From assembly GCA_013115145.1 (NCBI GenBank), contig JAAPAO010000013.1, positions 62,001 to 126,000 on the forward strand: 64,000 bases of DNA, written 5' to 3'. The position numbers were made by a program, and so were the translations under genes. How positions within the stretch are numbered: position 1 is the stretch's first letter; every line of letters begins with the position of its first letter. Shown here in pieces: positions 25,722 through 60,700 of this stretch. A model generated the notes under the pieces. The model was given only the letters and a program-made list of their open reading frames with translations. It made no database searches and was not told the origin of the DNA. The stretch comes from Perkinsus chesapeaki ATCC PRA-425. Taxonomy: Eukaryota > Protista > Perkinsozoa.

Positions 25722-26912
25722 TTACTTTAAACGACAGTCGGAAGCAAGGGAGTGGTAATCTTGACAGTCGGAGAAACCCATATTCTGGGAATAACTATCA
25801 CCATAGAAACAACGTGACCATTCCCAGTTATGTACAGCAAACAAAGTGCCATTAACATCGAACAAATGGTTGAACTGATCCTGGGTAACAACGCCTTCAG
25901 AAACCATACGTTGGGTAAGCTTATTTAGAGTATCCCAAATGTACTCGATACCACCATTGGAGTCAGGATAGGAAGAGGTATCTTTAGCACACATAGACAG
26001 CTTAGCACATCCGTTACCCATTTCACAGGAACCTTCAACCATAATAGTAATCTTGGCCTTAAGATTCTCCCATCCAGGTTGAGTGCAGACCTTGCATTGC
26101 TCAGTCATCATCCATTTCATACGCTCTAGTAAATCGTCCTCATAGCTACCACCAAGCTCATTTCTATAAAGCATCATAAGAGCATGGTCAGCATAGCGCA
26201 TAACGTACTCCGTCTCTTGAGAGTTCTCCTCACCCTCAATTGTACTGTCAACGAAGATGGAATTAGGCAAATAACCCATTCCCTGAGTGACCTCAACAAT
26301 CATATCTTGAGACTTTTGGAGAGCTTCTTTATAGTAATTATCGGCGATATGCTCAACATCGAAACTGATACCAATAGGAGCGATCTCGGCCATGGTTTGG
26401 GCGTTAACAGAGCGCATGAGGAACTGCTCGAACGTGTTAACGAAGGCGACCATTTTCTCACCACTCTTGTCGACAACATCACCATAGGTAAGCCAAATGA
26501 TGCCGTTGTTACCGCTCTCCTGGCGCCATTTCTTCATCCAGCTTACAAGGTTAGTCTGATCCTTGATGAAGTTATAATTAGAGGCATCGGCAATATTAAT
26601 GTACAAATCACCACAGTTCCACTGACGACCCATATCGCTCTTGGCAAAGTTGACCAAGGATTCGTCTCCCTCCCTCCAGTAGGACTGGGACCACGTGTAG
26701 GTGGCAATCTTATTCCCGGTACAGGCGTCCGAGGGCGGGGGTCGCGAAGTCGGAGGAGTAGGGGGGCTCGGAGGGAAGGTTACGGGTTGACTGGGATCGT
26801 CGGGAAGCGCTGACGGCAAACTGCCGGAGCCACCGCTACCAGATGTGGTAGAGCATCCATTGAAAGCTAATGCAATGAAGGCACAGGCTACTGGGGCGAT
26901 GGACCAAAGCAT
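25722..26912 (-). CDS. Unknown secreted/membrane-tethered family, copy 1 (396 aa, intronless); putative glycoside-hydrolase-like TIM barrel
   Basis: Uninterrupted ORF: hydrophobic N-terminus ending FNGCS, Pro/Thr linker, conserved domain with WSQ, LYIN, WLTYGD, ISFDVEH, LMMLYRN, ITIMVEG, FAVHNW. The CDS is secure; the fold is inference. Confidence 0.9.
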   Translation of the reverse strand: MLWSIAPVACAFIALAFNGCSTTSGSGGSGSLPSALPDDPSQPVTFPPSPPTPPTSRPPPSDACTGNKIATYTWSQSYWREGDESLVNFAKSDMGRQWNCGDLYINIADASNYNFIKDQTNLVSWMKKWRQESGNNGIIWLTYGDVVDKSGEKMVAFVNTFEQFLMRSVNAQTMAEIAPIGISFDVEHIADNYYKEALQKSQDMIVEVTQGMGYLPNSIFVDSTIEGEENSQETEYVMRYADHALMMLYRNELGGSYEDDLLERMKWMMTEQCKVCTQPGWENLKAKITIMVEGSCEMGNGCAKLSMCAKDTSSYPDSNGGIEYIWDTLNKLTQRMVSEGVVTQDQFNHLFDVNGTLFAVHNWEWSRCFYGDSYSQNMGFSDCQDYHSLASDCRLK

Positions 26913-27765
26913 TAAATATGAGAAGAACGGTAAACCTACAATAGAGAATGGTTTATTGGACAGTACAGTTAAAGCGCTAGAGCCCTACCAAGAGAATAGA
27001 GTAATAGTAATACAGTATAATATCTACTAGCGACACCTCACTCCTACAGCTAGTACAATGCTTGAGACACTCAATAGATACGAGTAAAGCGTCCCATAAC
27101 ACAAAGTCGTATTACATTACCCTGAAGCCGCCTAGCGGCGGCCGCTATTCCGTATAACATTGATATAAGAGTGTCAGTATGCCCGAGGAGCACTACACAG
27201 CGTAACGCTGTCTAAAATAACGTCTATCATTCAAGAGATCCGAGTTCGATTCAACCATCACGCATTTCTCAAGATATTTTTTGAGCTTTTTTAAAATAGC
27301 CTATCTCAAGGTTGCCTTATGTTGTTGAAACCTCCTCCTAAACTTTCAAAGACACAAGAGAGCGTCCAATCAGTGTGTTTTCAGAATTTTCCTCGACTCC
27401 TCAGTTCACCTCTGATGATTCCTAGATGCGTTTTCCCGAACTAGATACTTGACCACCTCATACTTGCCAACTCTACCCTCTAAACACAACACACAAGGCT
27501 TGGAGAAATCTACTACCCTAGCCCGATTAAATACGTGAATGCATCCTGGGCATACTCCTAGGAACGAGGAACCTCTATTCACAATAATCAACTGATGCAC
27601 CATCGTACAATCGAGTAGCACTCGCAATGCACTTGTGGCACTCGGTTAAATCACTAAAATGTCGCGTCGATAACGCAGGAACTGTGATAGGGCAGTTTGT
27701 TTGAACATAAACAGAGCTCTAAATGTGACACGAAGGGATTAACCCAATAAGTACAAAGTCAGCAA

Positions 27766-28956
27766 CTACTCAGCTCTGCAACTCTGTGCATCGAGATGAT
27801 AGTTCTGAACGCAATCAGTGTAGTTATGTTGCTGCGAGAACGAATCTCCATAATAACATCTTGACCACTCCCAGTTGTGGATTGCATATAAAGTACCGTT
27901 AACATCGAATAACTTATTGTATTGGTCTTGTGTCACAATGCCAGCAGGAACCATCTGACTAGTAAGGTCTTGTAGTTGATCCCAGACATACTCTATACCA
28001 CCGTTGGGATCAGGGTAGGAGGTGGCATCATACGCACACATAGAAAGCTTGCCACAACCGTTACCCATTTCACAGGATCCCTCAACCATGATAGTAATCT
28101 TGGCCTTCAAGTCCTCCCAGCCAGGTTGGGTGCATACAACGCATTGGTCAGTCATCATCCACTGCATACGCTCCAATAGACCGTCGTTGTTTGTACCATT
28201 AACCGAGTTCCTGTAAAGCATCATCAGAGCTCTATCAGCATTCTGCATAACATAAGTAGTTTCTTGTTGGTTTGGTTCACCTTCGATGGTACTGCCGACG
28301 AAAATAGAATTGGGCAGATAACCCATACCTTCAGTGACATTGGCAATCATTTGTCTTGAACTAGTAAGTGCCTTCAGATAGTAATCATCGGGAACATGCT
28401 CAACATCAAAGCTGATACCGATGGGGGATATCTCGGCCATGTCCTGGGCAGAGACGGAACGTATAAGGAACTGCTCGTAAGTGTTTACAAAATCACACAT
28501 TTTTTGACCATCCCTCTCAGTAACATCACCATAAGTTAACCAAATAATTTCATTGTTACCGCTATCTTGACGCCACTTTTTCATCCAGGCAACCAGCTGT
28601 GGTTGGTATTTGATAACATTGTAGTTAGTAGGATCGGCCACGTTGATGTAGAGTTCACCACAGTTCCAAGTCCTGCCCATATCAGTCTGAATGAAGTCAG
28701 TGAGCGTCGGATCTCCATCAACCCAATAGTCCTGTGACCACGAATACATACCAATCTTGTGTCCAGTGCAAGCATTGGTTGGTGGTGGCCTTGTAGTTGG
28801 AGGTGGGCCAGTCGTCTTAGGGAAAGTAACCGGTTGATTAGGATCTGCTGGCATCTGAGGAGGTAGTGTCTCTGGAGTACTATCACCCGAGTCGGTGGAG
28901 CAACCAGTGAGCACAAATGCCAGAGCCACAGACGCTAATCCTCCGAAAAACTTCAT
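27766..28956 (-). CDS. Same family, copy 2 (396 aa, intronless)
   Basis: MKFFGGLASVALAFVLTGCS N-terminus; same motif series as copy 1. Confidence 0.9.
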   Translation of the reverse strand: MKFFGGLASVALAFVLTGCSTDSGDSTPETLPPQMPADPNQPVTFPKTTGPPPTTRPPPTNACTGHKIGMYSWSQDYWVDGDPTLTDFIQTDMGRTWNCGELYINVADPTNYNVIKYQPQLVAWMKKWRQDSGNNEIIWLTYGDVTERDGQKMCDFVNTYEQFLIRSVSAQDMAEISPIGISFDVEHVPDDYYLKALTSSRQMIANVTEGMGYLPNSIFVGSTIEGEPNQQETTYVMQNADRALMMLYRNSVNGTNNDGLLERMQWMMTDQCVVCTQPGWEDLKAKITIMVEGSCEMGNGCGKLSMCAYDATSYPDPNGGIEYVWDQLQDLTSQMVPAGIVTQDQYNKLFDVNGTLYAIHNWEWSRCYYGDSFSQQHNYTDCVQNYHLDAQSCRAE

Positions 28957-29521
28957 TGTTAAATATTGGTGTATTTATATTTTACGATAGCCAGCGGAAC
29001 GAATTGTGTTGTTAGTAGCCCGGACACAAGCTAGCTTTGCGGGACTGTCCCTCATTTCCAAGCTCCCGACTGGCTTTATTCTGTGAGGGTTTGTCACTGA
29101 TATATAGTGCCAAGCATGCATACTATGAAATGGCGCGAGAGTTCTATTGCAATTGTCATCACGATAGAATACATAGCATGCTTTTTTCAAGGAGATCCCC
29201 TTGAGCATCGGCCGACCCCTGTCTTCCTGTACACAATTGTCCCCCAGGAATTGCCTCGGCTAATAATATTTTTCTTCACCGCCACAACTGTCTCCTATAT
29301 ATATTTCGTGGAATTCAACAAGTTCGGCAGCCCACCAAAGACTAACGCAAGTGCCATATTAACTAATAATGATAATGGTCTTACAGCTACTGCTGATGTA
29401 CTGGAAAAGCAGCAAGGGCATAGTCGCCCAGAATGAGAATCATGAGCGATTGCTCAATAGCTTATGTAAAACACGAAATGCTGTATGATGAATAACAGAC
29501 TCTACTGTACGACATAGTAGA

Positions 29522-30754
29522 TTACTTGCCCCTGCAAGTGTCAGCCATACTATGGTAATCCTGACAGTTGGTATAATTGTGCTCTGCAGAGAAATCATCG
29601 CCGAAATAACAGCGAGACCAATCCCAGTTGTGGATAGCAAAGAGAGTTCCATCAGTGAGGAAAAGCTTATTGTATTGATCCTGTGTTAAGATGCCGGCCG
29701 GAACAATATCCTTTGAGAGCTCTTCCAACGTATTCCAAACGTACTCGATACCACCATTGGGGTCGGGATACTGAGATGTATCCTTCACGCACATAGACAT
29801 TTTACCACAACCATTGCCCATCTTGCATGAACCCTCGACCATAATGGTGATCTTAGCACGAAGGTTTTCCCAACCAGGTTGGGTACAAATCACGCACTGA
29901 TCGGTCATCATCCATTGCATCTGCTCGACTAGGTCATCGGCGTGAGTATCGTCAACAGTATTCCTATAGAGCATCATGAGAGCTCTATCAGCATACTGCA
30001 TAACGTAAGAAGTTTCCAATTGGTTCTCTTCTCCTTCGATAGTGCTCCCCACAAGAATGGAGTGAGGTGGGTAACCCTGCGATTGCTCAACATCCTGGAC
30101 CATCTGCTGCGCGTTGACAAGAGCCTCTTTATAGAAGTCGTCCGGAACATCCTCGACATCGAAACTCACCCCTATGGGACCAATAACCGACATGTCCTGA
30201 GCCGACACTGATTGAATCAGGAAGTTCTTGAAGGTATCAACGAACCCAACCATCTTCGTGCCGTTCTTCTCTACCACGTCGCCGTAGGTCATCCAGATAA
30301 CCTCATCGTTACCACTGGCTTGTCTCCATTTTTTCATCCAGTTAACCAGCTTATCCGGGTCAGCAATAAAGTTATAGTTGGAGTAATCGGCGACATTGAT
30401 ATAGAGCTCACCGTAGTCCCAAGTGCGGCCTCTGTCACTCTGGATGAAGTCCGTCAGAGAAGGATCACCTTGGCGCCAGTAGTCTTGAGACCAAGAGTAG
30501 ATACCCATCTTGTGACCATTGGTAATATTGCTGACAGGGAACTGTGTCGGGCCGGAGGTTGAACTCATGGATGATGTAGTCGAGCCTGCCACGTCGCTGC
30601 CCGTCGTTGCCGAAGGACCTTGCTCTGAACTTGCGGTTGTCGTTACGACACTTGCGTCAGTGTCATTGTCTGGCCCGCTCTTCCCACTGCTCGAGGAGCA
30701 CCCAGATATGAACAACGGGATAGACAAGAGTAACCAGGCAAGAGAAGTTCGCAT
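29522..30754 (-). CDS. Same family, copy 3 (intronless)
   Basis: Likely start MRTSLAWLLLSIPLFISGCS at 30754; Ser/Thr-rich linker; VSFDVED variant of the core motif. Confidence 0.9.
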   Translation of the reverse strand: MRTSLAWLLLSIPLFISGCSSSSGKSGPDNDTDASVVTTTASSEQGPSATTGSDVAGSTTSSMSSTSGPTQFPVSNITNGHKMGIYSWSQDYWRQGDPSLTDFIQSDRGRTWDYGELYINVADYSNYNFIADPDKLVNWMKKWRQASGNDEVIWMTYGDVVEKNGTKMVGFVDTFKNFLIQSVSAQDMSVIGPIGVSFDVEDVPDDFYKEALVNAQQMVQDVEQSQGYPPHSILVGSTIEGEENQLETSYVMQYADRALMMLYRNTVDDTHADDLVEQMQWMMTDQCVICTQPGWENLRAKITIMVEGSCKMGNGCGKMSMCVKDTSQYPDPNGGIEYVWNTLEELSKDIVPAGILTQDQYNKLFLTDGTLFAIHNWDWSRCYFGDDFSAEHNYTNCQDYHSMADTCRGK

Positions 30755-31207
30755 AATAACTAGGAGTTGAGGAAAAGAATAAAGACCTGTTACAAGCTTA
30801 CCATCCGTGCTAGCGCGCCAACACAAAAACGTCACAAGGAAAGAATCTAATGAACTGAAAAGTATCACTGGCAGAGTATCGCTTGAAAAGTAGTAGTGAG
30901 ACTGGAATGTAGGAGCCATTTAATGAAAGGCACGGCTTCCTAGGAGCGTGTGAAGATTCCAGAGAGATCAACAGAATTCTGTAGTGTAAAAGTATCTGAT
31001 TCTCCGAGAAGTCTCGAAAACAATAGCGATATAGCTTGATCCTTGCACCAACAAAACACATTAGAGTAACGAATGAAATATGATAAGCATTCACTGATGT
31101 ATCCGAGAGGTATTGCCGAACAATGGCATAAAAAGGCGATGGATGAACAATTGTTCACCACGCAAAAACGATTACTATACGAACCAAGATATAGAGGGCC
31201 CCAGTAG

Positions 31208-32413
31208 TTACTTTGTTCTACAAGTAGCGGCCATCGAATGATAGTCCTGACAGTTGGTGTAGTTCTGTTGCCTCGAGAAATCGTCACCATAGTAGCAACG
31301 AGACCAGTCCCAATTGTGGATAGCATAAAGTGTACCGTTGGTGAGGAAGAGCTTGTCGTATTGCTCCTGTGTTAAGATTCCTTCTGGAACAATGGCATTG
31401 GTGAGCTCCTGGAGTGTGTTCCAAACATACTCAATACCACCAGTAGGATCGGGATACTGGGACGTATCCTTGACGCACATAGATAGCTTTCCGCAACCAT
31501 TTCCCATCTTGCAGGAGCCTTCGACCATAATGGTAATCTTAGCACGAAGATTCTCCCAACCGGGTTTAGTGCAAACCACGCATTGATCAGTCATCATCCA
31601 TCTCATGCGCTCAACGAGGTCATCTGAGTAGGTCCCGTTTACTTCATTACGATACAACATCATCAGGGCCCTATCTGCATACTGCATGACATATGTGGTT
31701 TCCTGTTGATTCTCTTCTCCCTCAATGGTGCTTCCAACTAGAATAGAGTGAGGCAGGTAGCCCATACTCTTCGTTACATTTTGCACCATGTCCTGGGCCG
31801 ACATAAGAGCCTCCTTGTAGTAAGTATCCGGGACATGCTCTACATCGAAGCTGAGGCCGATAGGAGCAATTTCGGCCATATCTTGAGCTGACACGGACTG
31901 TGTAAGAAAGTCCCCGAAAGTCTTAACAAATCCGACCATTTTGGTGCCGTTCTGCTCCACAACATCACCATAGGTCATCCAGATAACATTGTCGTTGCCA
32001 CTAACTTGTCTCCACTTCTTCATCCAATCGACAAGTTGAGGCTGATCAACAATAAAGTTGTAGTTGGTGTTATCGGCCACATTGATATATAACTCGCCGC
32101 AGTCCCAATCACGCCCTCTGTCTGTCTGGATAAAATCAGTCAGAGACGGATCGCCTTCTCTCCAGAAATCCTGAGACCACGCGTATATGCCAATAGGATG
32201 GCCTGTACACGGACTTGAGCTAGCGGGTCTAGGAGTCGGAGGAGCACCAGTGGTCTCCGAAGACGCTCCAGGACCGTTGGGATCACCTGGCTTATCCGAA
32301 GGTGGATTCTGGGTCACAGCGGAAGCGTCATTACCTTTTGAGTCGGACGAACAACCTCCGAAGAAGCAAGCAAGAGCGACCAGAACTGGTGATAGAAGGA
32401 GAATGGACTTCAT
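31208..32413 (-). CDS. Same family, copy 4 (intronless)
   Basis: Likely start MKSILLLSPVLVALACFFGGCS at 32413; same motif series. Confidence 0.9.
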   Translation of the reverse strand: MKSILLLSPVLVALACFFGGCSSDSKGNDASAVTQNPPSDKPGDPNGPGASSETTGAPPTPRPASSSPCTGHPIGIYAWSQDFWREGDPSLTDFIQTDRGRDWDCGELYINVADNTNYNFIVDQPQLVDWMKKWRQVSGNDNVIWMTYGDVVEQNGTKMVGFVKTFGDFLTQSVSAQDMAEIAPIGLSFDVEHVPDTYYKEALMSAQDMVQNVTKSMGYLPHSILVGSTIEGEENQQETTYVMQYADRALMMLYRNEVNGTYSDDLVERMRWMMTDQCVVCTKPGWENLRAKITIMVEGSCKMGNGCGKLSMCVKDTSQYPDPTGGIEYVWNTLQELTNAIVPEGILTQEQYDKLFLTNGTLYAIHNWDWSRCYYGDDFSRQQNYTNCQDYHSMAATCRTK

Positions 32414-32867
32414 GATAGTGTATTTGGTACCAACTGTGGTGTAGCGACGAACCGCCAAGATGGATTCCCAGGGGCTAGTATCTTTCCAAGCTAACGCACA
32501 ATGGCAACGAGAGACAAACATACACAAAGGAGACAACGACCAGCTCCACTGTGACACAGCAGCTTGAATTACACGTTGCCGCTCCACAATGTGTAGAGCA
32601 AACCAAATGAGACGACATGCCAAAAACTGAGCCTATTAGATGGGACGAAAAAACTCAAGACCCTGAACCAGGCATTCTTCCTCCACTTCAGATTTACAAC
32701 GCATTCCACCAGATTTCGGATCTGATACCAGTGTTAAAGCGATGGTCTGTTCATCTCACACGACGAAAGACAGAGAAACATAACAGTTTGAGAATTATAC
32801 TTTGCACAATATTGACGCCTTGGGGTTACTAGGCGTCACGAGATGTAGAAGAAGGAATGCACAGCAA

Positions 32868-34222
32868 TTACAACATCCTGCAATCGGAGGCTAAAGGATG
32901 ATAGTTTTGACAGTTTGAGAAACCCATCTCCTGGGAAAACGAGTCACCATAGAAACAACGGGACCATTCCCAGTTGTGGATGGCAAATGAGGTACCATTG
33001 ACGTCGAATAGATGATCGAACTGTGCTTGGGTTACAATCTGAAAACAGCTAATGTTAACGCGAACGATAAGGACATCGAACTGGATGCCGCAAGGAAGCG
33101 TCTCTTACCCCATCGGAAATCATTCTTCGTTGTAGTTCTTGTAAGGTATCCCACACGTATTGAATACCACCCGCAGGATCCGGGTAAGAAGTGGTATCTT
33201 TGGCGCACATGGAAAGCTTCTTGCAGCCGCTGCCCATTTCGCATGCACCCTCAACCATAATGGTGATCTTAGCCTTAAGATTCTCCCATCCAGGTTGGGT
33301 GCAGACAACACACTGCTCAGTCATCATCCATTTCATACGCTCTACCAGATCATCCTCATACCTGACATCACAGCCAAAGTGATAAAATGAGAACCTATCA
33401 CACAAATATCCCAACTTACGTTCCGTTAACTTCGTTCCTATAAAGCATCATAAGAGCTCTGTCAGCATGACGCATAACAAACTCGGTCTCAACAACATTC
33501 TTTTCACCTTCGATGGTACAATCAACGAAGATAGATCCAGGCAGATATCCCATTCCCTCTGTAACTTCTTGCTTCATAGTTTGGGCATCTATCAGTGCCT
33601 TCTCATAGTATTCTTCTGCGACGTGCTCGACATCAAAACTGATGCCCATAGGAGCAATCAAAGCCATATCTTGAGGTGAGACCGATCTCATTAAGAAGTG
33701 TTTGAAAGTCTGTACAAATGCCACCATCTTAGGGCCATCCTTCTCGACGACGTCACCATACGTCAGCCAGACAGTGCCAATGCTGCCGCTCTGCTTGCGC
33801 CACTCCTTCATCCATTCAACGAGCTTGTCCTCATCCTTAATCCTGTTGTGGTTCGAAGCGTCCGCCACGTTGATGTACAAATCACCGCAGTTCCACTGGC
33901 GACCCACAGGGTGATCCAAGAAATTGATCAGAGAAGGATCGCCCTCACGCCAATAGCCCTGAGACCATGTATAGGTGCCAATACGGTTACCAGTGCAACC
34001 GTTGCCTGGAGGTGGCCTTGAGGTTGGCGGAACTCCTGTGGTCGGTGGGAACGTCGGCACTCGACTCGGATCCGGCGGAAGGGTGGGAAGACCGGGCCCT
34101 CCGCTTGATCCTGGAGCACTGCTTGTTGAGCACCCACCGAGAAACACGGTGCTTGTGATGGTGATGGAGATGCATAGTACCGATGTAAGGACTGAGGAGA
34201 GACTCTTCGGAGCGATGAGCAT
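32868..34222 (-). CDS. Same family, copy 5 (three exons)
   Basis: Start MLIAPKSL…VFLGGCS at 34222. Removing introns 33362-33419 (GTAAGT…GTCAG, 58 nt) and 33039-33108 (GTAAGA…TTTCAG, 70 nt) restores a frame collinear with copy 1, ending CRML* at 32868. Confidence 0.88.
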
Positions 34223-51179: not shown

Positions 51180-52329
51180 CCACGGGACGTTTTCCATCCG
51201 CACTTCGCGCCCACATCGACTTTCTCGTGCAAGAAGGGAACGGGGACAGAGATCAAGTCGCTATCGGTCACTTCTGCCCAGCTGATCGTCCCGGTTGTGA
51301 GCTCATCTTGCTCCCCAGCGGTCCCTCATGGCGAACGGGCAGGGCCGAGATGGCGTTTCGTAATATGACACAAACATATACCGCATACATGTATAATATG
51401 CTTTCTAGTGCTTACGTTGCTCATCACTGTAATAGAGTGAGGCATTGGCAGCGGCAGCAGCAGCAACGGTAGTGGCTTACGTTGACGGTATCCGATCGAT
51501 CGTCACATCACCGAGGAGCATCGCCAAATACACCTCGCTACCAAAACGGTCAACATATGGCGTAGATGGGTTACTTTCCACCATAACCGCTGCGACGCCA
51601 CTGACTAAGGCCCTCCACATAGAGAAGTATCTGCAGAAAGATTACTACCCATACCACAACAAAAGGAGGACAACACCTCAGAGCGGCCCCTCGAGTCATC
51701 ACTGCATGCCGATCATTCACACCACCGTAGTCCTCCCCATCCGGAACAAACACGACCTCGCTCTCCCTAGCACCGAGCAAGCCGAGGCTTATATGAGGGG
51801 CGAGCCAATGGAGGTCAGGACGGCTTCGAACGATCCATCTGTACTGGAAACCTCCCCTCGCCTCAGCCATCTCAAAATGCTGTAAACAGCTATCAAGTAT
51901 CCTGTACACCATCAGCCGTGACCCACAGAAGGCCTGCCCTGTCCGGTTCAATAGGACATTCCTCTGATATTGAGAGGTGACGTCAAAGCCAGCTTCTATG
52001 AGCCTTCGCTCCACACCGATGCTCTCATCCTGTATAAATAGCTGAACTCTGGCTCCTGCCCGACGGAGGATGCTCATAAACGTATTAGCAGCCAACCGCT
52101 CCTCCTTTCCAGTGACATGAGGCGTTCCAACAAACGCATCAATCTCATACCCTTCAGAGGTTAGAGCAGCTATCAGATATGTGCCAACACTCTGCATTGT
52201 ATCATTGGTTACTCGACCACCTATTTTACCATGGAAGCATATACCAACCCTTGGGCTACCAAAGGCCAACATGAGGACTGTCAAAAGGACGAGGAGGAGG
52301 ACGACGACGACGGGCGTACGGGCGGCCAT
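51180..52329 (-). CDS. Type II membrane protein, putative glycosyltransferase-like
   Basis: N-terminal anchor VVVVLLLVLLTVLMLAFG, then RVGICFHG, YRWIVRSRPDLHW and VPDGEDYGGVNDRHAV. The function is inference; the 3' end is approximate. Confidence 0.55.
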
Positions 52330-52452
52330 TGGAACATGAGATCGAAAGGAAAACTGGCCCCTGATATCGAGAATGGGCAACTCAAGCCGATGATGAAGGA
52401 TACCACTTCTCCTGGCTGTTATCGAAGTGTCGCGGTAGTCTCAACGTATTCA

Positions 52453-57700: not shown

Positions 57701-60700
57701 GGGCAGATTACTTTCCATCTTAGCCTCCTTCTTGGCTACAGCCACACTATCAGCCATGAATGCAGAGTTCTCATCCAGCACATCAAACCTGAGGAAGCAA
57801 GACATAGGCGAGCAGCAAGAGAAGCAAGTAGATGAAGACCCATTATGGCCATGTAAGAGGCTAAACTAATACTAACTGGCATGTTACTTCAATAACGTCG
57901 AATTGGTTATCCACTTGAATTAGATACCAACCGTGACATTGTCTAGCTCCCCCTCCTCCCCCTCCTTCACCACCAGACTTACTGTTCCATATGGCTAACC
58001 TTGGTCACATCCATACCATCCTCACCATAAAGGAACTCTACAATGGAGCGATCAGTGTCTCGTACAGTATAATCGTAGTTCACAGTAAGACCCTCTAAGT
58101 TCTTGACTAAGCATCTTTGAAGGTATCCAGACCTACTCAGCACTACAACCAACAACAATGTACCGCTCCCTCGCCACCGCTACCTAGCTGTCTTCACTGC
58201 TGTATCGACCAGACCCTCTCGACCAGCCATACAATGGTAAAAGAACTCCTGTGGACGGTAGCCAGTAAGGAATCTGAATGTCAGCAGCAGCAGCAGCCTC
58301 CAGCGTGTTAAGACAGCGCCAGCACTCCCACCTATCAGTAATGTAACCTCCTGCCCTCGGACCAATATCATATTGAGCAAAGCTGGGCAAGAACCGCTGA
58401 GTTCGCATACGAGGAGCACGGTGGCCCTCCAACTCCTGCTGGCCAAGCATTGCGTCAATCATAGAATGGTTAACCTTAGAACCCTTAGCACCTAGTACGA
58501 GACACCTACACCCTACTGCATCGTGAATCCGGCGGTATTACCAGTGCTAACCATAGCAGAGAAGCAGTTCTCTGGGAAAGGGGACATCTGGCCCTTAGGG
58601 AACAGCACATCAATAAGCTCTGAAAACACCAACACTGACCATCACCACCTAACCCAGCGTCCTTACTTCCCCAGTAATCTCTATTAGTTGACAGCATAGT
58701 CTCCTCTAGCTCCTCAAACATAGGGTGCTGCACCTTAGGATCGGCGGCATACAGCTTGCCTAAGCACCACTATAGCAGCAGCCTAGCCTTCCCCTCTATC
58801 TGCTGCCTACCTATCTCCCTCTGCAGTTTATGAAGGGTAGTGACATTGGTCTCCTCAGGGCTGTTCTCTTTAACCCAATCCCTAATCTTGTTCCAAGAAT
58901 CTTCTCGAGCCTTGTTCAACATCTGCCTTCTAGCTTCATTGCCCTCTGGCGTGATAAGCAAATCTCTCATAGCACAAGTGAACCCATGCAGCTGAAGGTA
59001 CAGTGTAAGCATCCTTCCAAGACCTAATAAAAGACTAAACAGTGTCCACTCAGCCTCACCAGTCTTACCAGTCAAGAGCAATCCCGCTGCCTTAGGGCCA
59101 CACAACTCATAGAAGAGATGGGTAAGACCATTGGCCGTGGCACCGAATGATGCCTTATCCAGCACACCTTGAATAAGCTCTGTGTCCTTTATAGTGACCA
59201 TTTGTTCCTCCTTATTGCCATCAGCCACACCACCCCAGAGGTCACCAGGTGTCTTGGCCTTTGCATGATGGTTGAATCCATTCACTATAGACTTGTCCGT
59301 GCTGTGAGTAGCGAACTTAATAAGACTCTTCAAGAAGATGGTGATGACCTGTTTTCCCGTCCAAAGCTTCTCCGGTTTAACAATGACCGGCGGCTCCATA
59401 ACAATCCTGAAGTTGCTAGGTACACCTGCTGGGGTACTCAGCTTAGTCAGTTGGCCTCGGGACTTCACACTGCCTATACCAGACGTATCGCCCTCAATGG
59501 CAGCCCTCATGGCCGTATAGATGAGATTCTGGACTTGTGTTTTGGTCATAAAATGGTCCCTAGCAGTGAGGAACACTCCGGAGACCACATGGTCCTGGAT
59601 AAGACCACGAAGAGGCTTTCCGGAGGTGGGGCCAAGATACTGGTGATCGGCGGAGGCAATATAGATGGCCTCTGCCCTCGCATTGGAGTCCTGGGGACAA
59701 TGCAAGTTGATCTCATCACCATCGAAATCAGCATTGAACGTGTTGCAGTTGGCATAGTGCATACGAATAGTCTTCTCCTTACTCAACACCTAAACACCCA
59801 TACCGCTCCTTCCCCAAATCCTACCCTCTATATTACCTTCACAAACAGCGCCATAATACCGGGCTTATGCAGAGTAGGCTGACGGTTCACCAGGAGCGGA
59901 TCACCATCCCTAACATGCCTCAGTACCACCCTCGGCTTTTTATCAGGATTGGTGCTCTGGTAGAGACTCCTTGCAATAGCCTTCCTCTGATGTGGTTGCC
60001 GGCCCTTCAATGACACTAGCTTGCCATCCGGGAACACCACCGCCGCTGCGCCTGGGTACTTATCAGGGCCATTCTCGACCAATGCTCTCAGATAGTCGAC
60101 GTTGAAGGAGTTCACCGGCTCCGGTACGGTAAGCTGCAAGGCCGCGAACATAGGAAGACCGATCTGGTTGGTTTCCAAAGAGACATCCGGACTGATGACA
60201 CTTCTAGCGGCGTAGTTAACACGCTTTCCCATCATTTTCATCCGGAAGAGGCCTTGCTTTCTCTCCAACAGCTGCCTCACACCAAATGCCACCACCTTGT
60301 TCTGAGCCTTCCCGCTCTTTGCAGAATCTAGATAATTATTGACGTTATTCTGCAGATCGATAAGGGCCGTTCCCAAAGTGGTCATCGGCCCTCTCTGAGG
60401 GACAGTGCCATCAGCCTGCTTCGATGGCTCTTCCTCGTCTGATATAATATCCGGTACCGCGTCACCAGCTGAAAGGCACCGAATCCCGGCAGCCTAGACT
60501 CCCCTTCACCTTACCTTTTTCCCTTTGCATAGTGTCCTCCACGGCCTGCTGGTCAGTCTCTAAGAGCTTCTTTAAGAGCAGGTTAGATTCCAGAATATTC
60601 TTCAAGCACACAGTAGAGGCCGGTAGAAAGCCTTGGTTGTCATCGCTGTCACCACCAAAACGGAGAGGTCTCAGCTTGTTAGGTGGCACGACTATATTCT

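What the first reader, a model, noticed from the sequence alone, without database searches (positions are those of the whole stretch)
25722..34222. Tandem array of five genes of an unrecognised secreted, glycoside-hydrolase-like family
Seen: five same-strand paralogues (~400 aa) share the layout signal/anchor + Pro/Ser/Thr linker + conserved ~330-aa domain. The conserved motif order is W-S-Q, LYIN, WxTYGD, (I/V/L)SFDVE, TIEGE, LMMLYRN, ITIMVEG, (F/Y)A(I/V)HNW, plus conserved C-terminal cysteines. Established: a D-x-E at the end of beta-4 is the catalytic site of GH18-like (beta/alpha)8 barrels. Inference, from memory and unverified: the alternating short hydrophobic strands fit a TIM barrel, and the series FDVE / LMxYRN / IMVE / AIH resembles uncharacterised bacterial proteins with HLDIEP / MAYRD / VET / AIH motifs. 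That would make this an expanded extracellular glycan-active enzyme family, possibly acquired horizontally, in a probable parasite.
Basis: partly seen in the sequence, partly recalled or inferred. Interest (0 to 1): 0.8.

Follow-up and report, generated by a model that had tools for sequence, protein, structure and literature searches.

The report
Perkinsus secreted chitinase-like barrel gene array
A shellfish parasite (Perkinsus) carries five neighbouring, expressed genes for an unnamed family of exported proteins that are predicted to fold like chitinases and probably cut sugar chains; the family looks like the parasite group's own invention, not a recent bacterial import.

Summary
Five minus-strand paralogues (396-410 aa, 57-67% identical) fill 25722-34222. 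All five are intact. Copy 5 only looked broken: it has two GT..AG introns, kept in P. olseni and spliced out in public contigs.

Each protein has a secretion leader ending in an invariant G-C, a 45-60-aa Pro/Ser/Thr linker and a ~335-aa cysteine-rich domain. There is no Pfam, NCBIfam or PDB sequence match.

AlphaFold2 (pLDDT 86.7) gives an eight-stranded (beta/alpha)8 barrel. Its best structural matches are almost all GH18 chitinases and chitinase-like proteins (Z 14-15). Conserved polar residues sit at the C-terminal ends of seven of the eight strands, including D184-x-E186 on beta-4.

Horizontal transfer is not supported. A profile search of 1.84 billion proteins found 61 relatives. All that could be placed are Perkinsus or uncultured relatives, and none came from 185,579 prokaryotic genomes. 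The array is syntenic with P. olseni and under strong purifying selection.

Best reading (0.55): extracellular GH18-like glycosidases forming a new sequence family. The lipobox-like leader may mark bacterial-type lipidation; that was not tested here.

The scan read this same stretch before (s1-211508). It also noted similar leaders, Lgt and LspA genes on other pieces of this genome.

The parts
25722..26912 (-). Copy 1 CDS, 396 aa, no intron. Orthologue is P. olseni P0004 (89%); P. marinus P0005 and P0006 fall in the same clade.
27766..28956 (-). Copy 2 CDS, 396 aa, no intron. This is the protein that was folded. Orthologue is P. olseni P0001 (89%).
28900..28956 (-). Copy 2 leader, residues 1-19: a hydrophobic secretion signal ending L-T-G-C (lipobox-like). 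The model has pLDDT below 50 here.
28765..28899 (-). Copy 2 Pro/Ser/Thr-rich linker, residues 20-64 (58% P/S/T). Low model confidence, and it evolves faster than the domain.
27769..28764 (-). Copy 2 (beta/alpha)8 barrel domain, residues 65-396. Strands are at 67-72, 102-107, 138-144, 179-185, 218-224, 242-246, 286-292 and 357-360.
28399..28407 (-). Codons of D184-V185-E186 of copy 2, at the end of beta-4. This is the proposed catalytic pair; D is 39/39 and E 38/39 in the core family.
29522..30754 (-). Copy 3 CDS, 410 aa counted from the Met before the leader; identical to the called protein P0009. It lacks both C63 and C99. Orthologue is P. olseni P0008 (82%).
31208..32413 (-). Copy 4 CDS, 401 aa counted from the Met before the leader; identical to the called protein P0003. 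Orthologue is P. olseni P0002 (84%).
33420..34222 (-). Copy 5, exon 1.
33362..33419 (-). Copy 5, intron 1: 58 nt, GT..AG. Skipped exactly in contigs of three public runs. An intron lies at the same place in P. olseni.
33109..33361 (-). Copy 5, exon 2.
33039..33108 (-). Copy 5, intron 2: 70 nt, GT..AG. Skipped exactly in contigs of two public runs. An intron lies at the same place in P. olseni.
32868..33038 (-). Copy 5, exon 3 with stop codon. The spliced product is 408 aa; orthologue is P. olseni P0007 (408 aa).

Best explanation
The array encodes five old, separately conserved members of a family found only in Perkinsus and its uncultured relatives.

Each protein is exported by an N-terminal signal peptide. 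A disordered Pro/Ser/Thr-rich stalk then holds out a disulfide-stabilised (beta/alpha)8 barrel. The barrel's nearest structural relatives are GH18 chitinases and chitinase-like proteins.

Inferred mechanism: retaining hydrolysis of a beta-linked, N-acetylhexosamine-containing glycan, as in GH18. E186 at the end of beta-4 would act as the acid/base. D184 and Y248 (just after beta-6) would position the substrate's acetamido group.

Inferred targets: the parasite's own wall, or host (mollusc) chitin, mucin or N-glycans.

Shown here: gene structure, expression as spliced RNA, fold prediction, the pattern of conservation, synteny, purifying selection, and restriction to the Perkinsus lineage.

Inferred only: catalytic activity, the roles of individual residues, and the substrate.
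For: - Anatomy: five intact paralogues.
- Expression: contigs of public runs skip both copy 5 introns exactly, and zero-mismatch contigs lie on copy 3.
- Fold: AF2 model with pLDDT 86.7 and pTM 0.85, eight strands alternating with helices.
- Structural neighbours: Foldseek top hits are GH18 (ScCTS1, hevamine, concanavalin B), then PgaB and an O-GlcNAc hydrolase, E about 3e-5. In VIA-align, roughly nine in ten of the top 50 representatives are GH18 or GH18-like proteins, Z 14.9-11.8, about 240 residues aligned, rmsd about 4 A. A second look gives the same picture.
- Atlas: the nearest ESM Atlas folds include bacterial GH18.
- Conservation: in 39 core members, invariant or near-invariant polar and aromatic residues lie at the C-terminal ends of seven strands: Y71/W73, N105/D108, Y142/D144, D184/E186, Y248/R249/N250, E292 and H360/W364. 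After beta-5 the conserved residue is G226.
- Linear spacing: hevamine's catalytic residues are named in PDB titles as D125/E127/Y183. With the barrel aligned from residue 66, D184/E186/Y248 fall at offsets 119/121/183.
- Fusions: distant relatives are joined to GH20 beta-N-acetylhexosaminidase domains.
- Source names: distant Perkinsus paralogues are named 'Chitinase' by a source.
- Selection: domain pN 0.125-0.25 against pS 0.77-0.89.
- Age: 1:1 orthologues and conserved gene order in P. olseni.
Against: - No sequence-level link to GH18 or any other known family: Pfam, NCBIfam, PDB sequence and PDB profile searches are empty. hhalign against a small GH18 alignment gives probability 0.5%.
- Only the last D-x-E of the GH18 DxxDxDxE motif is present.
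- No model coordinates were available, so residue-level superposition and clustering of the acidic residues in three dimensions could not be checked.
- Z of about 14-15 at 10-14% identity is usual between different glycosidase barrels, and clan GH-A members reach Z 12-13.
- Several of the best structural matches are non-catalytic GH18-like proteins (concanavalin B, narbonin, XIP/XAIP, chi-lectins).
- An invariant Glu at the end of beta-7 (E292) has, as far as I recall, no GH18 counterpart.
Confidence: 0.55

Rival explanations
1. The barrel is a glycosidase with clan GH-A ('4/7') chemistry, not GH18 chemistry. E186 at the end of beta-4 would be the acid/base and E292 at the end of beta-7 the nucleophile, in a classical double displacement. 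The substrate then need not contain N-acetylhexosamine.
For: E186 (38/39) and E292 (39/39) lie at the C-terminal ends of beta-4 and beta-7. There is also a conserved Tyr after beta-6 and a Trp after beta-8, as in clan GH-A (established knowledge). GH1 (Klotho), GH39 (PslG) and GH5 chains appear in the top 50 at Z 11.9-13.2.
Against: GH18 proteins fill roughly nine in ten of the top 50 rows and score 1.5-3 Z units higher. The GH-A hallmark Asn before the acid/base Glu (N-E-P) is V-E-H here. Foldseek's top ranks hold GH18, PgaB and an O-GlcNAc hydrolase, with no GH-A chain listed in the top 50.
Confidence: 0.15
2. The proteins are non-catalytic glycan-binding proteins on the GH18-like scaffold: lectins or adhesins, or inhibitors of host enzymes, like chi-lectins, concanavalin B or XIP-type inhibitors.
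For: Many top structural matches are non-catalytic GH18-like proteins: concanavalin B, narbonin, XAIP, XIP-I, TCLL, Ym1, SPS-40. A distant P. olseni paralogue is named 'Adhesion related protein'. In the GH20 fusions and in the PoAdh-like branch the D-x-E is lost or altered.
Against: In the core family, D184, E292, N105, D108, Y142 and D144 are invariant and E186, Y248 and N250 nearly so. All lie at or next to strand ends over deep divergence down to about 30% identity. That pattern fits an active site; known chi-lectins have lost the catalytic Glu (established knowledge).
Confidence: 0.2
3. The family was acquired from bacteria by horizontal transfer as a lipoprotein glycosidase, and the lipobox-like leader is a relic of that origin.
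For: The leader ends [LIFM]-x-G-C like a bacterial lipobox. Copies 1-4 lack introns in an intron-rich region. The nearest ESM Atlas clusters by features and by fold are bacterial.
Against: No bacterial or archaeal homologue was found among 1.84 billion representatives (61 hits in all), in 185,579 species genomes or in viral contigs. Every homologue that could be placed is Perkinsus or lies on a eukaryotic contig. For the two contigs tested, the housekeeping genes are closest to Perkinsus. Scan notes report the same kind of leader on unrelated Perkinsus families (s1-221137, s1-235041; unchecked), which would make it a lineage trait and not a mark of this family's origin. The Atlas similarities are weak (0.83-0.90; TM 0.48-0.55).
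Confidence: 0.1

Closest known systems
Glycoside hydrolase family 18 (chitinases, endo-beta-N-acetylglucosaminidases, chitinase-like lectins; e.g. hevamine, ScCTS1, S. marcescens ChiB)
   Same: Both are (beta/alpha)8 barrels. GH18 gives the best structural matches (Z 14-15, about 240 residues aligned). Both have a D-x-E at the end of beta-4, a conserved Tyr after beta-6, a Trp after beta-8, and are secreted.
   Different: There is no detectable sequence or profile similarity. The first two Asp of DxxDxDxE are missing (Ile and Ser in their place). This family adds an invariant Glu at the end of beta-7, a cysteine-rich insert between beta-7 and beta-8, eight to ten conserved cysteines, and is restricted to Perkinsea.
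PgaB/BpsB C-terminal domain (GH153) and C. difficile Cwp19 barrel
   Same: Both are surface or periplasmic barrels acting on GlcNAc polymers, and both are among the structural matches (Foldseek E about 4e-5; Z 12.2-14.0).
   Different: They score slightly lower than GH18, share no motifs that could be verified, and are bacterial only.
Perkinsus olseni 'Adhesion related protein' (BAG85335.1 / B6ZIU8) and the Perkinsus proteins auto-named 'Chitinase' (C5K632, C5K633, A0A7J6LTE0)
   Same: They are true homologues: 27% identity to copy 2, E 9e-35. They have the same barrel length and the same C-terminal cysteine pattern, and belong to the same genus.
   Different: They form a separate, long-branched subfamily with a plain signal peptide without G-C and no P/S/T linker. 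The beta-4 motif is altered (FVDVE, FNVD, FDAE) and the YRN motif is lost. No functional data could be found in the searchable literature.
Bacterial lipoproteins (Lgt/LspA substrates)
   Same: The signal peptide ends [LIFM]-x-G-C and is followed by a Ser/Gly/Thr-rich tether. The Cys appears to be unpaired.
   Different: The host is a eukaryote. Position -2 is often polar (N, Q, E, H). Lipidation is untested.

Membership tests
GH18 (Pfam PF00704, clan GH-K) | (beta/alpha)8 barrel fold closest to GH18 structures | tested here: met
   AF2 pLDDT 86.7 with eight strands. GH18 and GH18-like proteins fill roughly nine in ten of the top 50 rows, Z 14.9-11.8. Foldseek E about 3e-5.
GH18 (Pfam PF00704, clan GH-K) | Sequence or profile match to the family model | tested here: not met
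   No PF00704 hit for the window proteins at E<=1. No member among 26 hits it at E<=10. hhalign against a six-sequence GH18 alignment gives probability 0.5%. No PDB sequence or profile hit.
GH18 (Pfam PF00704, clan GH-K) | DxxDxDxE motif at the end of beta-4 | tested here: inconclusive
   Only D184-x-E186 is present, and it is at the right place. The positions of the first two Asp hold I179 and S182.
GH18 (Pfam PF00704, clan GH-K) | Conserved Tyr after beta-6 (hevamine Y183, ChiB Y214) facing the active site | tested here: inconclusive
   Y248 (37/39) lies two residues after beta-6, at linear offset 183 from the start of the barrel. No coordinates were available for a superposition.
GH18 (Pfam PF00704, clan GH-K) | Hydrolysis of beta-1,4-GlcNAc linkages with retention through an oxazolinium intermediate | not testable with these tools
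   This needs an enzyme assay.
Clan GH-A (4/7 superfamily) | Glu at the end of beta-4 and Glu at the end of beta-7 | tested here: met
   E186 and E292, by strand position in the model.
Clan GH-A (4/7 superfamily) | Asn directly before the acid/base Glu (N-E-P) | tested here: not met
   The sequence is V185-E186-H187.
Bacterial-type lipoproteins | Lipobox [LVI][ASTVI][GAS]C at the end of a signal peptide | tested here: inconclusive
   G(-1) and C(+1) are kept in the five copies, their orthologues, P0019 and most full-length environmental members, and -3 is hydrophobic. Position -2 is often atypical (N, Q, E, H, G).
Bacterial-type lipoproteins | Lgt and LspA present in the organism | not tested
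   Known only from scan notes s1-241970 and s1-225840 (unchecked) and from a published P. marinus EST with a BlastX hit to prolipoprotein diacylglyceryl transferase, E 2e-23 (PMC2868825).
Bacterial-type lipoproteins | S-diacylglyceryl modification of the +1 Cys | not testable with these tools
   This needs labelling or mass spectrometry.
Horizontally acquired bacterial gene | Bacterial homologues within which the eukaryotic genes nest | tested here: not met
   There are 61 hits in 1.84 billion representatives, and all that could be placed are Perkinsus or eukaryotic contigs. None in 185,579 prokaryotic species genomes.

The most novel reading that the evidence does not exclude
These five proteins and their relatives are genuine bacterial-type lipoproteins made by a eukaryote. 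A Perkinsus Lgt/LspA pathway would recognise the [LIFM]-x-G-C leader, attach a diacylglycerol to the invariant unpaired Cys and cut before it. The GH18-like barrels would then hang from the parasite's surface on a Pro/Ser/Thr stalk. If so, the family would be both a new glycoside hydrolase family and a ready-made set of substrates for a lipidation route that reviews consider absent from eukaryotes.
Probability: 0.3. Interest if true: 0.85.

Novelty: new variant of a known kind. Interest (0 to 1): 0.58.

Why it matters
Perkinsus species cause heavy losses in oysters and clams, and few of their surface or secreted effectors are understood.

- This is an expanded, conserved and expressed family of exported enzyme-like proteins with no database family. 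It is a candidate new glycoside hydrolase family and a candidate factor in wall remodelling or in host-glycan attack.
- Because it is restricted to Perkinsea, it could serve as a lineage-specific marker or antigen.
- Its conserved lipobox-like leader gives a concrete, testable substrate set for the question of whether these alveolates use a bacterial-type lipoprotein pathway.

Tried and rejected
- Pfam on the six ORFs at E<=1 and on 26 family members at E<=10: only scattered chance hits.
- NCBIfam: nothing for the domain. Two insignificant hits of one leader to bacterial lipoprotein leaders, E 0.04-0.09.
- PDB by sequence and by profile: nothing meaningful.
- hhalign of the family against a GH18 alignment built from E. 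coli ChiA and five plasmid-borne GH18 genes: no relation. The GH18 link therefore rests on fold alone.
- 'Copy 5 is a pseudogene': rejected, because it has two spliced introns.
- 'Bacterial contamination': rejected. Copy 5 has spliceosomal introns, the neighbours are eukaryotic (Rpb1 exons in the window), and gene order matches P. olseni through Ssl1/p44 and an ABCD transporter.
- Scans of prokaryotic genomes and viral contigs: no relatives.
- A high-depth 'joint' at 33360>33438 with 19 foreign letters: rejected as alternative splicing. The inserted letters encode the copy-1-type N-E-L-G-G-S, so these are cross-matching paralogue transcripts.
- Literature searches for Perkinsus with HGT/glycoside hydrolase, lipobox, PoAdh, chitinase or adhesion-related: nothing on this family.
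- Model coordinates are not exposed, so no distance or cleft analysis was possible.

Full report
**Observation**

The ORF list shows five minus-strand paralogues between 25722 and 34222. tblastn of family members against the whole window finds exactly these five and no further fragment.

Copies 3 and 4 start at the Met before the leader (30754 and 32413). They are then identical to the called proteins P0009 (410 aa) and P0003 (401 aa).

Copy 5 looked split, with a divergent tail. Reading the DNA and splicing out two GT..AG introns (33362-33419 and 33039-33108) gives an intact 408-aa protein.

Contigs of three small public runs from one study skip intron 1 exactly, and contigs of two of them skip intron 2. 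On the plus strand the skipped ends read CT..AC. One run matches with almost no mismatches, and zero-mismatch contigs also lie on copy 3. The runs are only guessed to be RNA, but a spliced form is most simply explained by transcripts.

**Organism and context**

The best named hits are Perkinsus olseni (82-89% for each copy), followed by P. marinus and P. chesapeaki paralogues. Scan notes call the genome P. chesapeaki. That fits the masking of the window's own proteins in the search output.

The window holds few long ORFs apart from the array, and it has Rpb1 exons near 59 kb.

A P. olseni contig carries the same order: copy 5 (three exon pieces, introns at the same two sites), then copy 4, copy 3, copy 2, copy 1, then Ssl1/p44 and an ABCD-type transporter.

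In a maximum-likelihood tree each window copy pairs 1:1 with a P. olseni orthologue. The array therefore predates the split of the two species.

Synonymous sites between copies are saturated (pS 0.77-0.89). Nonsynonymous difference is 0.125-0.25 in the domain and 0.33-0.53 in the leader and linker. These are old duplicates, each under purifying selection.

**Anatomy of the protein**

- **Leader.** A hydrophobic signal ends in an invariant G-C.
- **Linker.** It is 45-60 aa long and 51-64% Pro/Ser/Thr. The model has low confidence here.
- **Domain.** About 335 aa, with eight to ten conserved cysteines.
- **Cysteine pairing.** C63 and C99 are lost together in copy 3 and its orthologue. In most members the number of cysteines after the leader Cys is even. 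The leader Cys is therefore probably unpaired.

**Fold**

AlphaFold2 on a 26-sequence alignment gave pLDDT 86.7 and pTM 0.85, with most 10-residue blocks of the domain above 90. Eight strands alternate with helices.

- Foldseek against the PDB puts GH18 proteins first (ScCTS1, class III chitinases, concanavalin B, hevamine), then the PgaB C-terminal domain and an O-GlcNAc hydrolase, at E about 3e-5.
- An independent all-against-representatives alignment gives Z 14.9-11.8, about 240 aligned residues, rmsd about 4 A and 7-14% identity. Roughly nine in ten of the top 50 rows are GH18 or GH18-like proteins. The rest are Cwp19, PgaB, PslG, Klotho and a GH5.
- A second look at Foldseek's top 1000 agrees.
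- ESM Atlas fold neighbours are bacterial GH18, DUF3142 and unannotated proteins at TM 0.48-0.55.

**Active-site pattern**

In 39 core members the invariant or near-invariant polar and aromatic residues sit at or just after the C-terminal ends of seven of the eight strands:

| Strand | Conserved residues |
|---|---|
| beta-1 | Y71, W73 |
| beta-2 | N105, D108 |
| beta-3 | Y142, D144 |
| beta-4 | D184, E186 |
| beta-5 | G226 (no polar residue) |
| beta-6 | Y248, R249, N250 |
| beta-7 | E292 |
| beta-8 | H360, W364 |

By established knowledge of TIM-barrel enzymes, this end of the barrel is the catalytic face.

D184-x-E186 and Y248 match the linear positions of hevamine D125/E127/Y183, which PDB titles name as its catalytic residues. 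This equivalence is an inference. The model's coordinates are not exposed, so I could not superpose residues or measure clustering.

E292 at the end of beta-7 is an extra invariant acid. It keeps a clan GH-A style E(beta-4)/E(beta-7) mechanism open as a rival.

**Sequence-level membership**

No sequence-level link was found:

- Pfam, NCBIfam, PDB sequence and PDB profile searches are empty.
- hhalign against a GH18 alignment that I built from E. coli ChiA and five plasmid GH18 genes shows no relation.

The family works like, and looks like, a GH18-type barrel. It cannot be filed as a GH18 member.

**Distribution and origin**

The word-index search found 28 relatives: Perkinsus paralogues plus eight metagenomic proteins at 33-39% identity. 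The exhaustive profile search of 1.84 billion representatives found only 61 hits, 35 of them below 1e-30.

- The metagenomic members lie on compact eukaryotic contigs beside cyclin, Vps37-like, PEX11, CorA and polycystin-like genes.
- The mitochondrial G3P dehydrogenase on one such contig is 58% identical to P. olseni, against 43% for the next named group, the oomycetes.
- On a contig of a more divergent member, SHMT is closest to P. chesapeaki (64%), then Vitrella and dinoflagellates at about 60%. This second placement is weaker.
- The most divergent branch is also Perkinsus. It includes the protein deposited as 'Adhesion related protein' of P. olseni (27% identity, E 9e-35 to copy 2) and proteins auto-named 'Chitinase'.
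- Weak hits (E 5e-9 to 8e-4) are C-terminal domains fused to GH20 beta-N-acetylhexosaminidase domains in metagenomic proteins. One of these lies on a contig beside a UBA-domain gene. Their D-x-E is not kept.
- No relative was found in 185,579 prokaryotic species genomes or in IMG/VR. Both scans are pattern-seeded, so their sensitivity is limited.

The evidence favours a family that arose and diversified within Perkinsea. Horizontal transfer from bacteria has no positive support.

**The leader**

[LIFM]-x-G-C is kept in the five copies, their orthologues, P0019 and most full-length environmental members, while the rest of the N-terminus is free to vary. It resembles the bacterial lipobox.

Scan notes on other pieces of this genome report the same leader on unrelated families (s1-221137, s1-235041), four Lgt genes (s1-241970) and an LspA-like gene (s1-225840). 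I could not check those notes.

Independently, a published P. marinus EST survey lists a BlastX hit to prolipoprotein diacylglyceryl transferase at E 2e-23 (PMC2868825).

This makes lipid anchoring a serious but untested possibility. It also means the leader says nothing about a bacterial origin of this particular family.

**Verdict**

- The TIM-barrel, GH18-like reading is supported at the level of fold and active-site pattern.
- Catalysis and substrate remain inference.
- Horizontal transfer is not supported.

The family is a new, lineage-restricted sequence family of a known structural kind.

Noticed in passing
window 33362-33419 and 33039-33108; L020 5523-5577 and 5833-5926: Only copy 5 has introns (58 and 70 nt). 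The same two sites are split in the P. olseni orthologue. Copies 1-4 and the environmental homologues have none. Whether copy 5 gained them or the others lost them is open.
   Followed up: partly
L001 (ENA k141_594798), also the contig of P0027: Uncultured Perkinsus relatives in metagenomes have very compact, apparently intron-free gene arrangements, with intergenic gaps of about 50 nt at GC 46%. The order cyclin, family member, Vps37-like, G3PDH, CorA, CorA, polycystin is conserved between two contigs.
   Followed up: partly
P0075, P0077, P0086 (L003 133-2475): Metagenomic proteins of 762-780 aa join an N-terminal GH20 beta-N-acetylhexosaminidase domain to a C-terminal domain distantly related to this family. 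That domain has lost the D-x-E and may act as a binding module.
   Followed up: partly
window 33360-33438 (read laying joint): High-depth contigs in runs X1 and X3 replace 77 nt with 19 other letters. On the minus strand those letters encode the copy-1-type N-E-L-G-G-S. This looks like cross-matching transcripts of a copy-1-like paralogue or of another species, which would mean that paralogue is abundant in those runs.
   Followed up: partly
window 58770-59789 (-): An ORF with RNA polymerase Rpb1 domains 2 and 3 (E 1e-27): an exon of a large-subunit RNA polymerase gene.
   Followed up: no
window 51571-52380 (-): A 269-aa ORF with a DUF7796 match (E 2e-9).
   Followed up: no
P0010, P0012, P0013, P0016 (Perkinsus subfamily): A sister subfamily replaces the G-C leader with a plain signal peptide followed by a small N-terminal module with several closely spaced cysteines (starting TDCS-x-GD-x-[FY]C) before a Thr-rich linker.
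   Followed up: no
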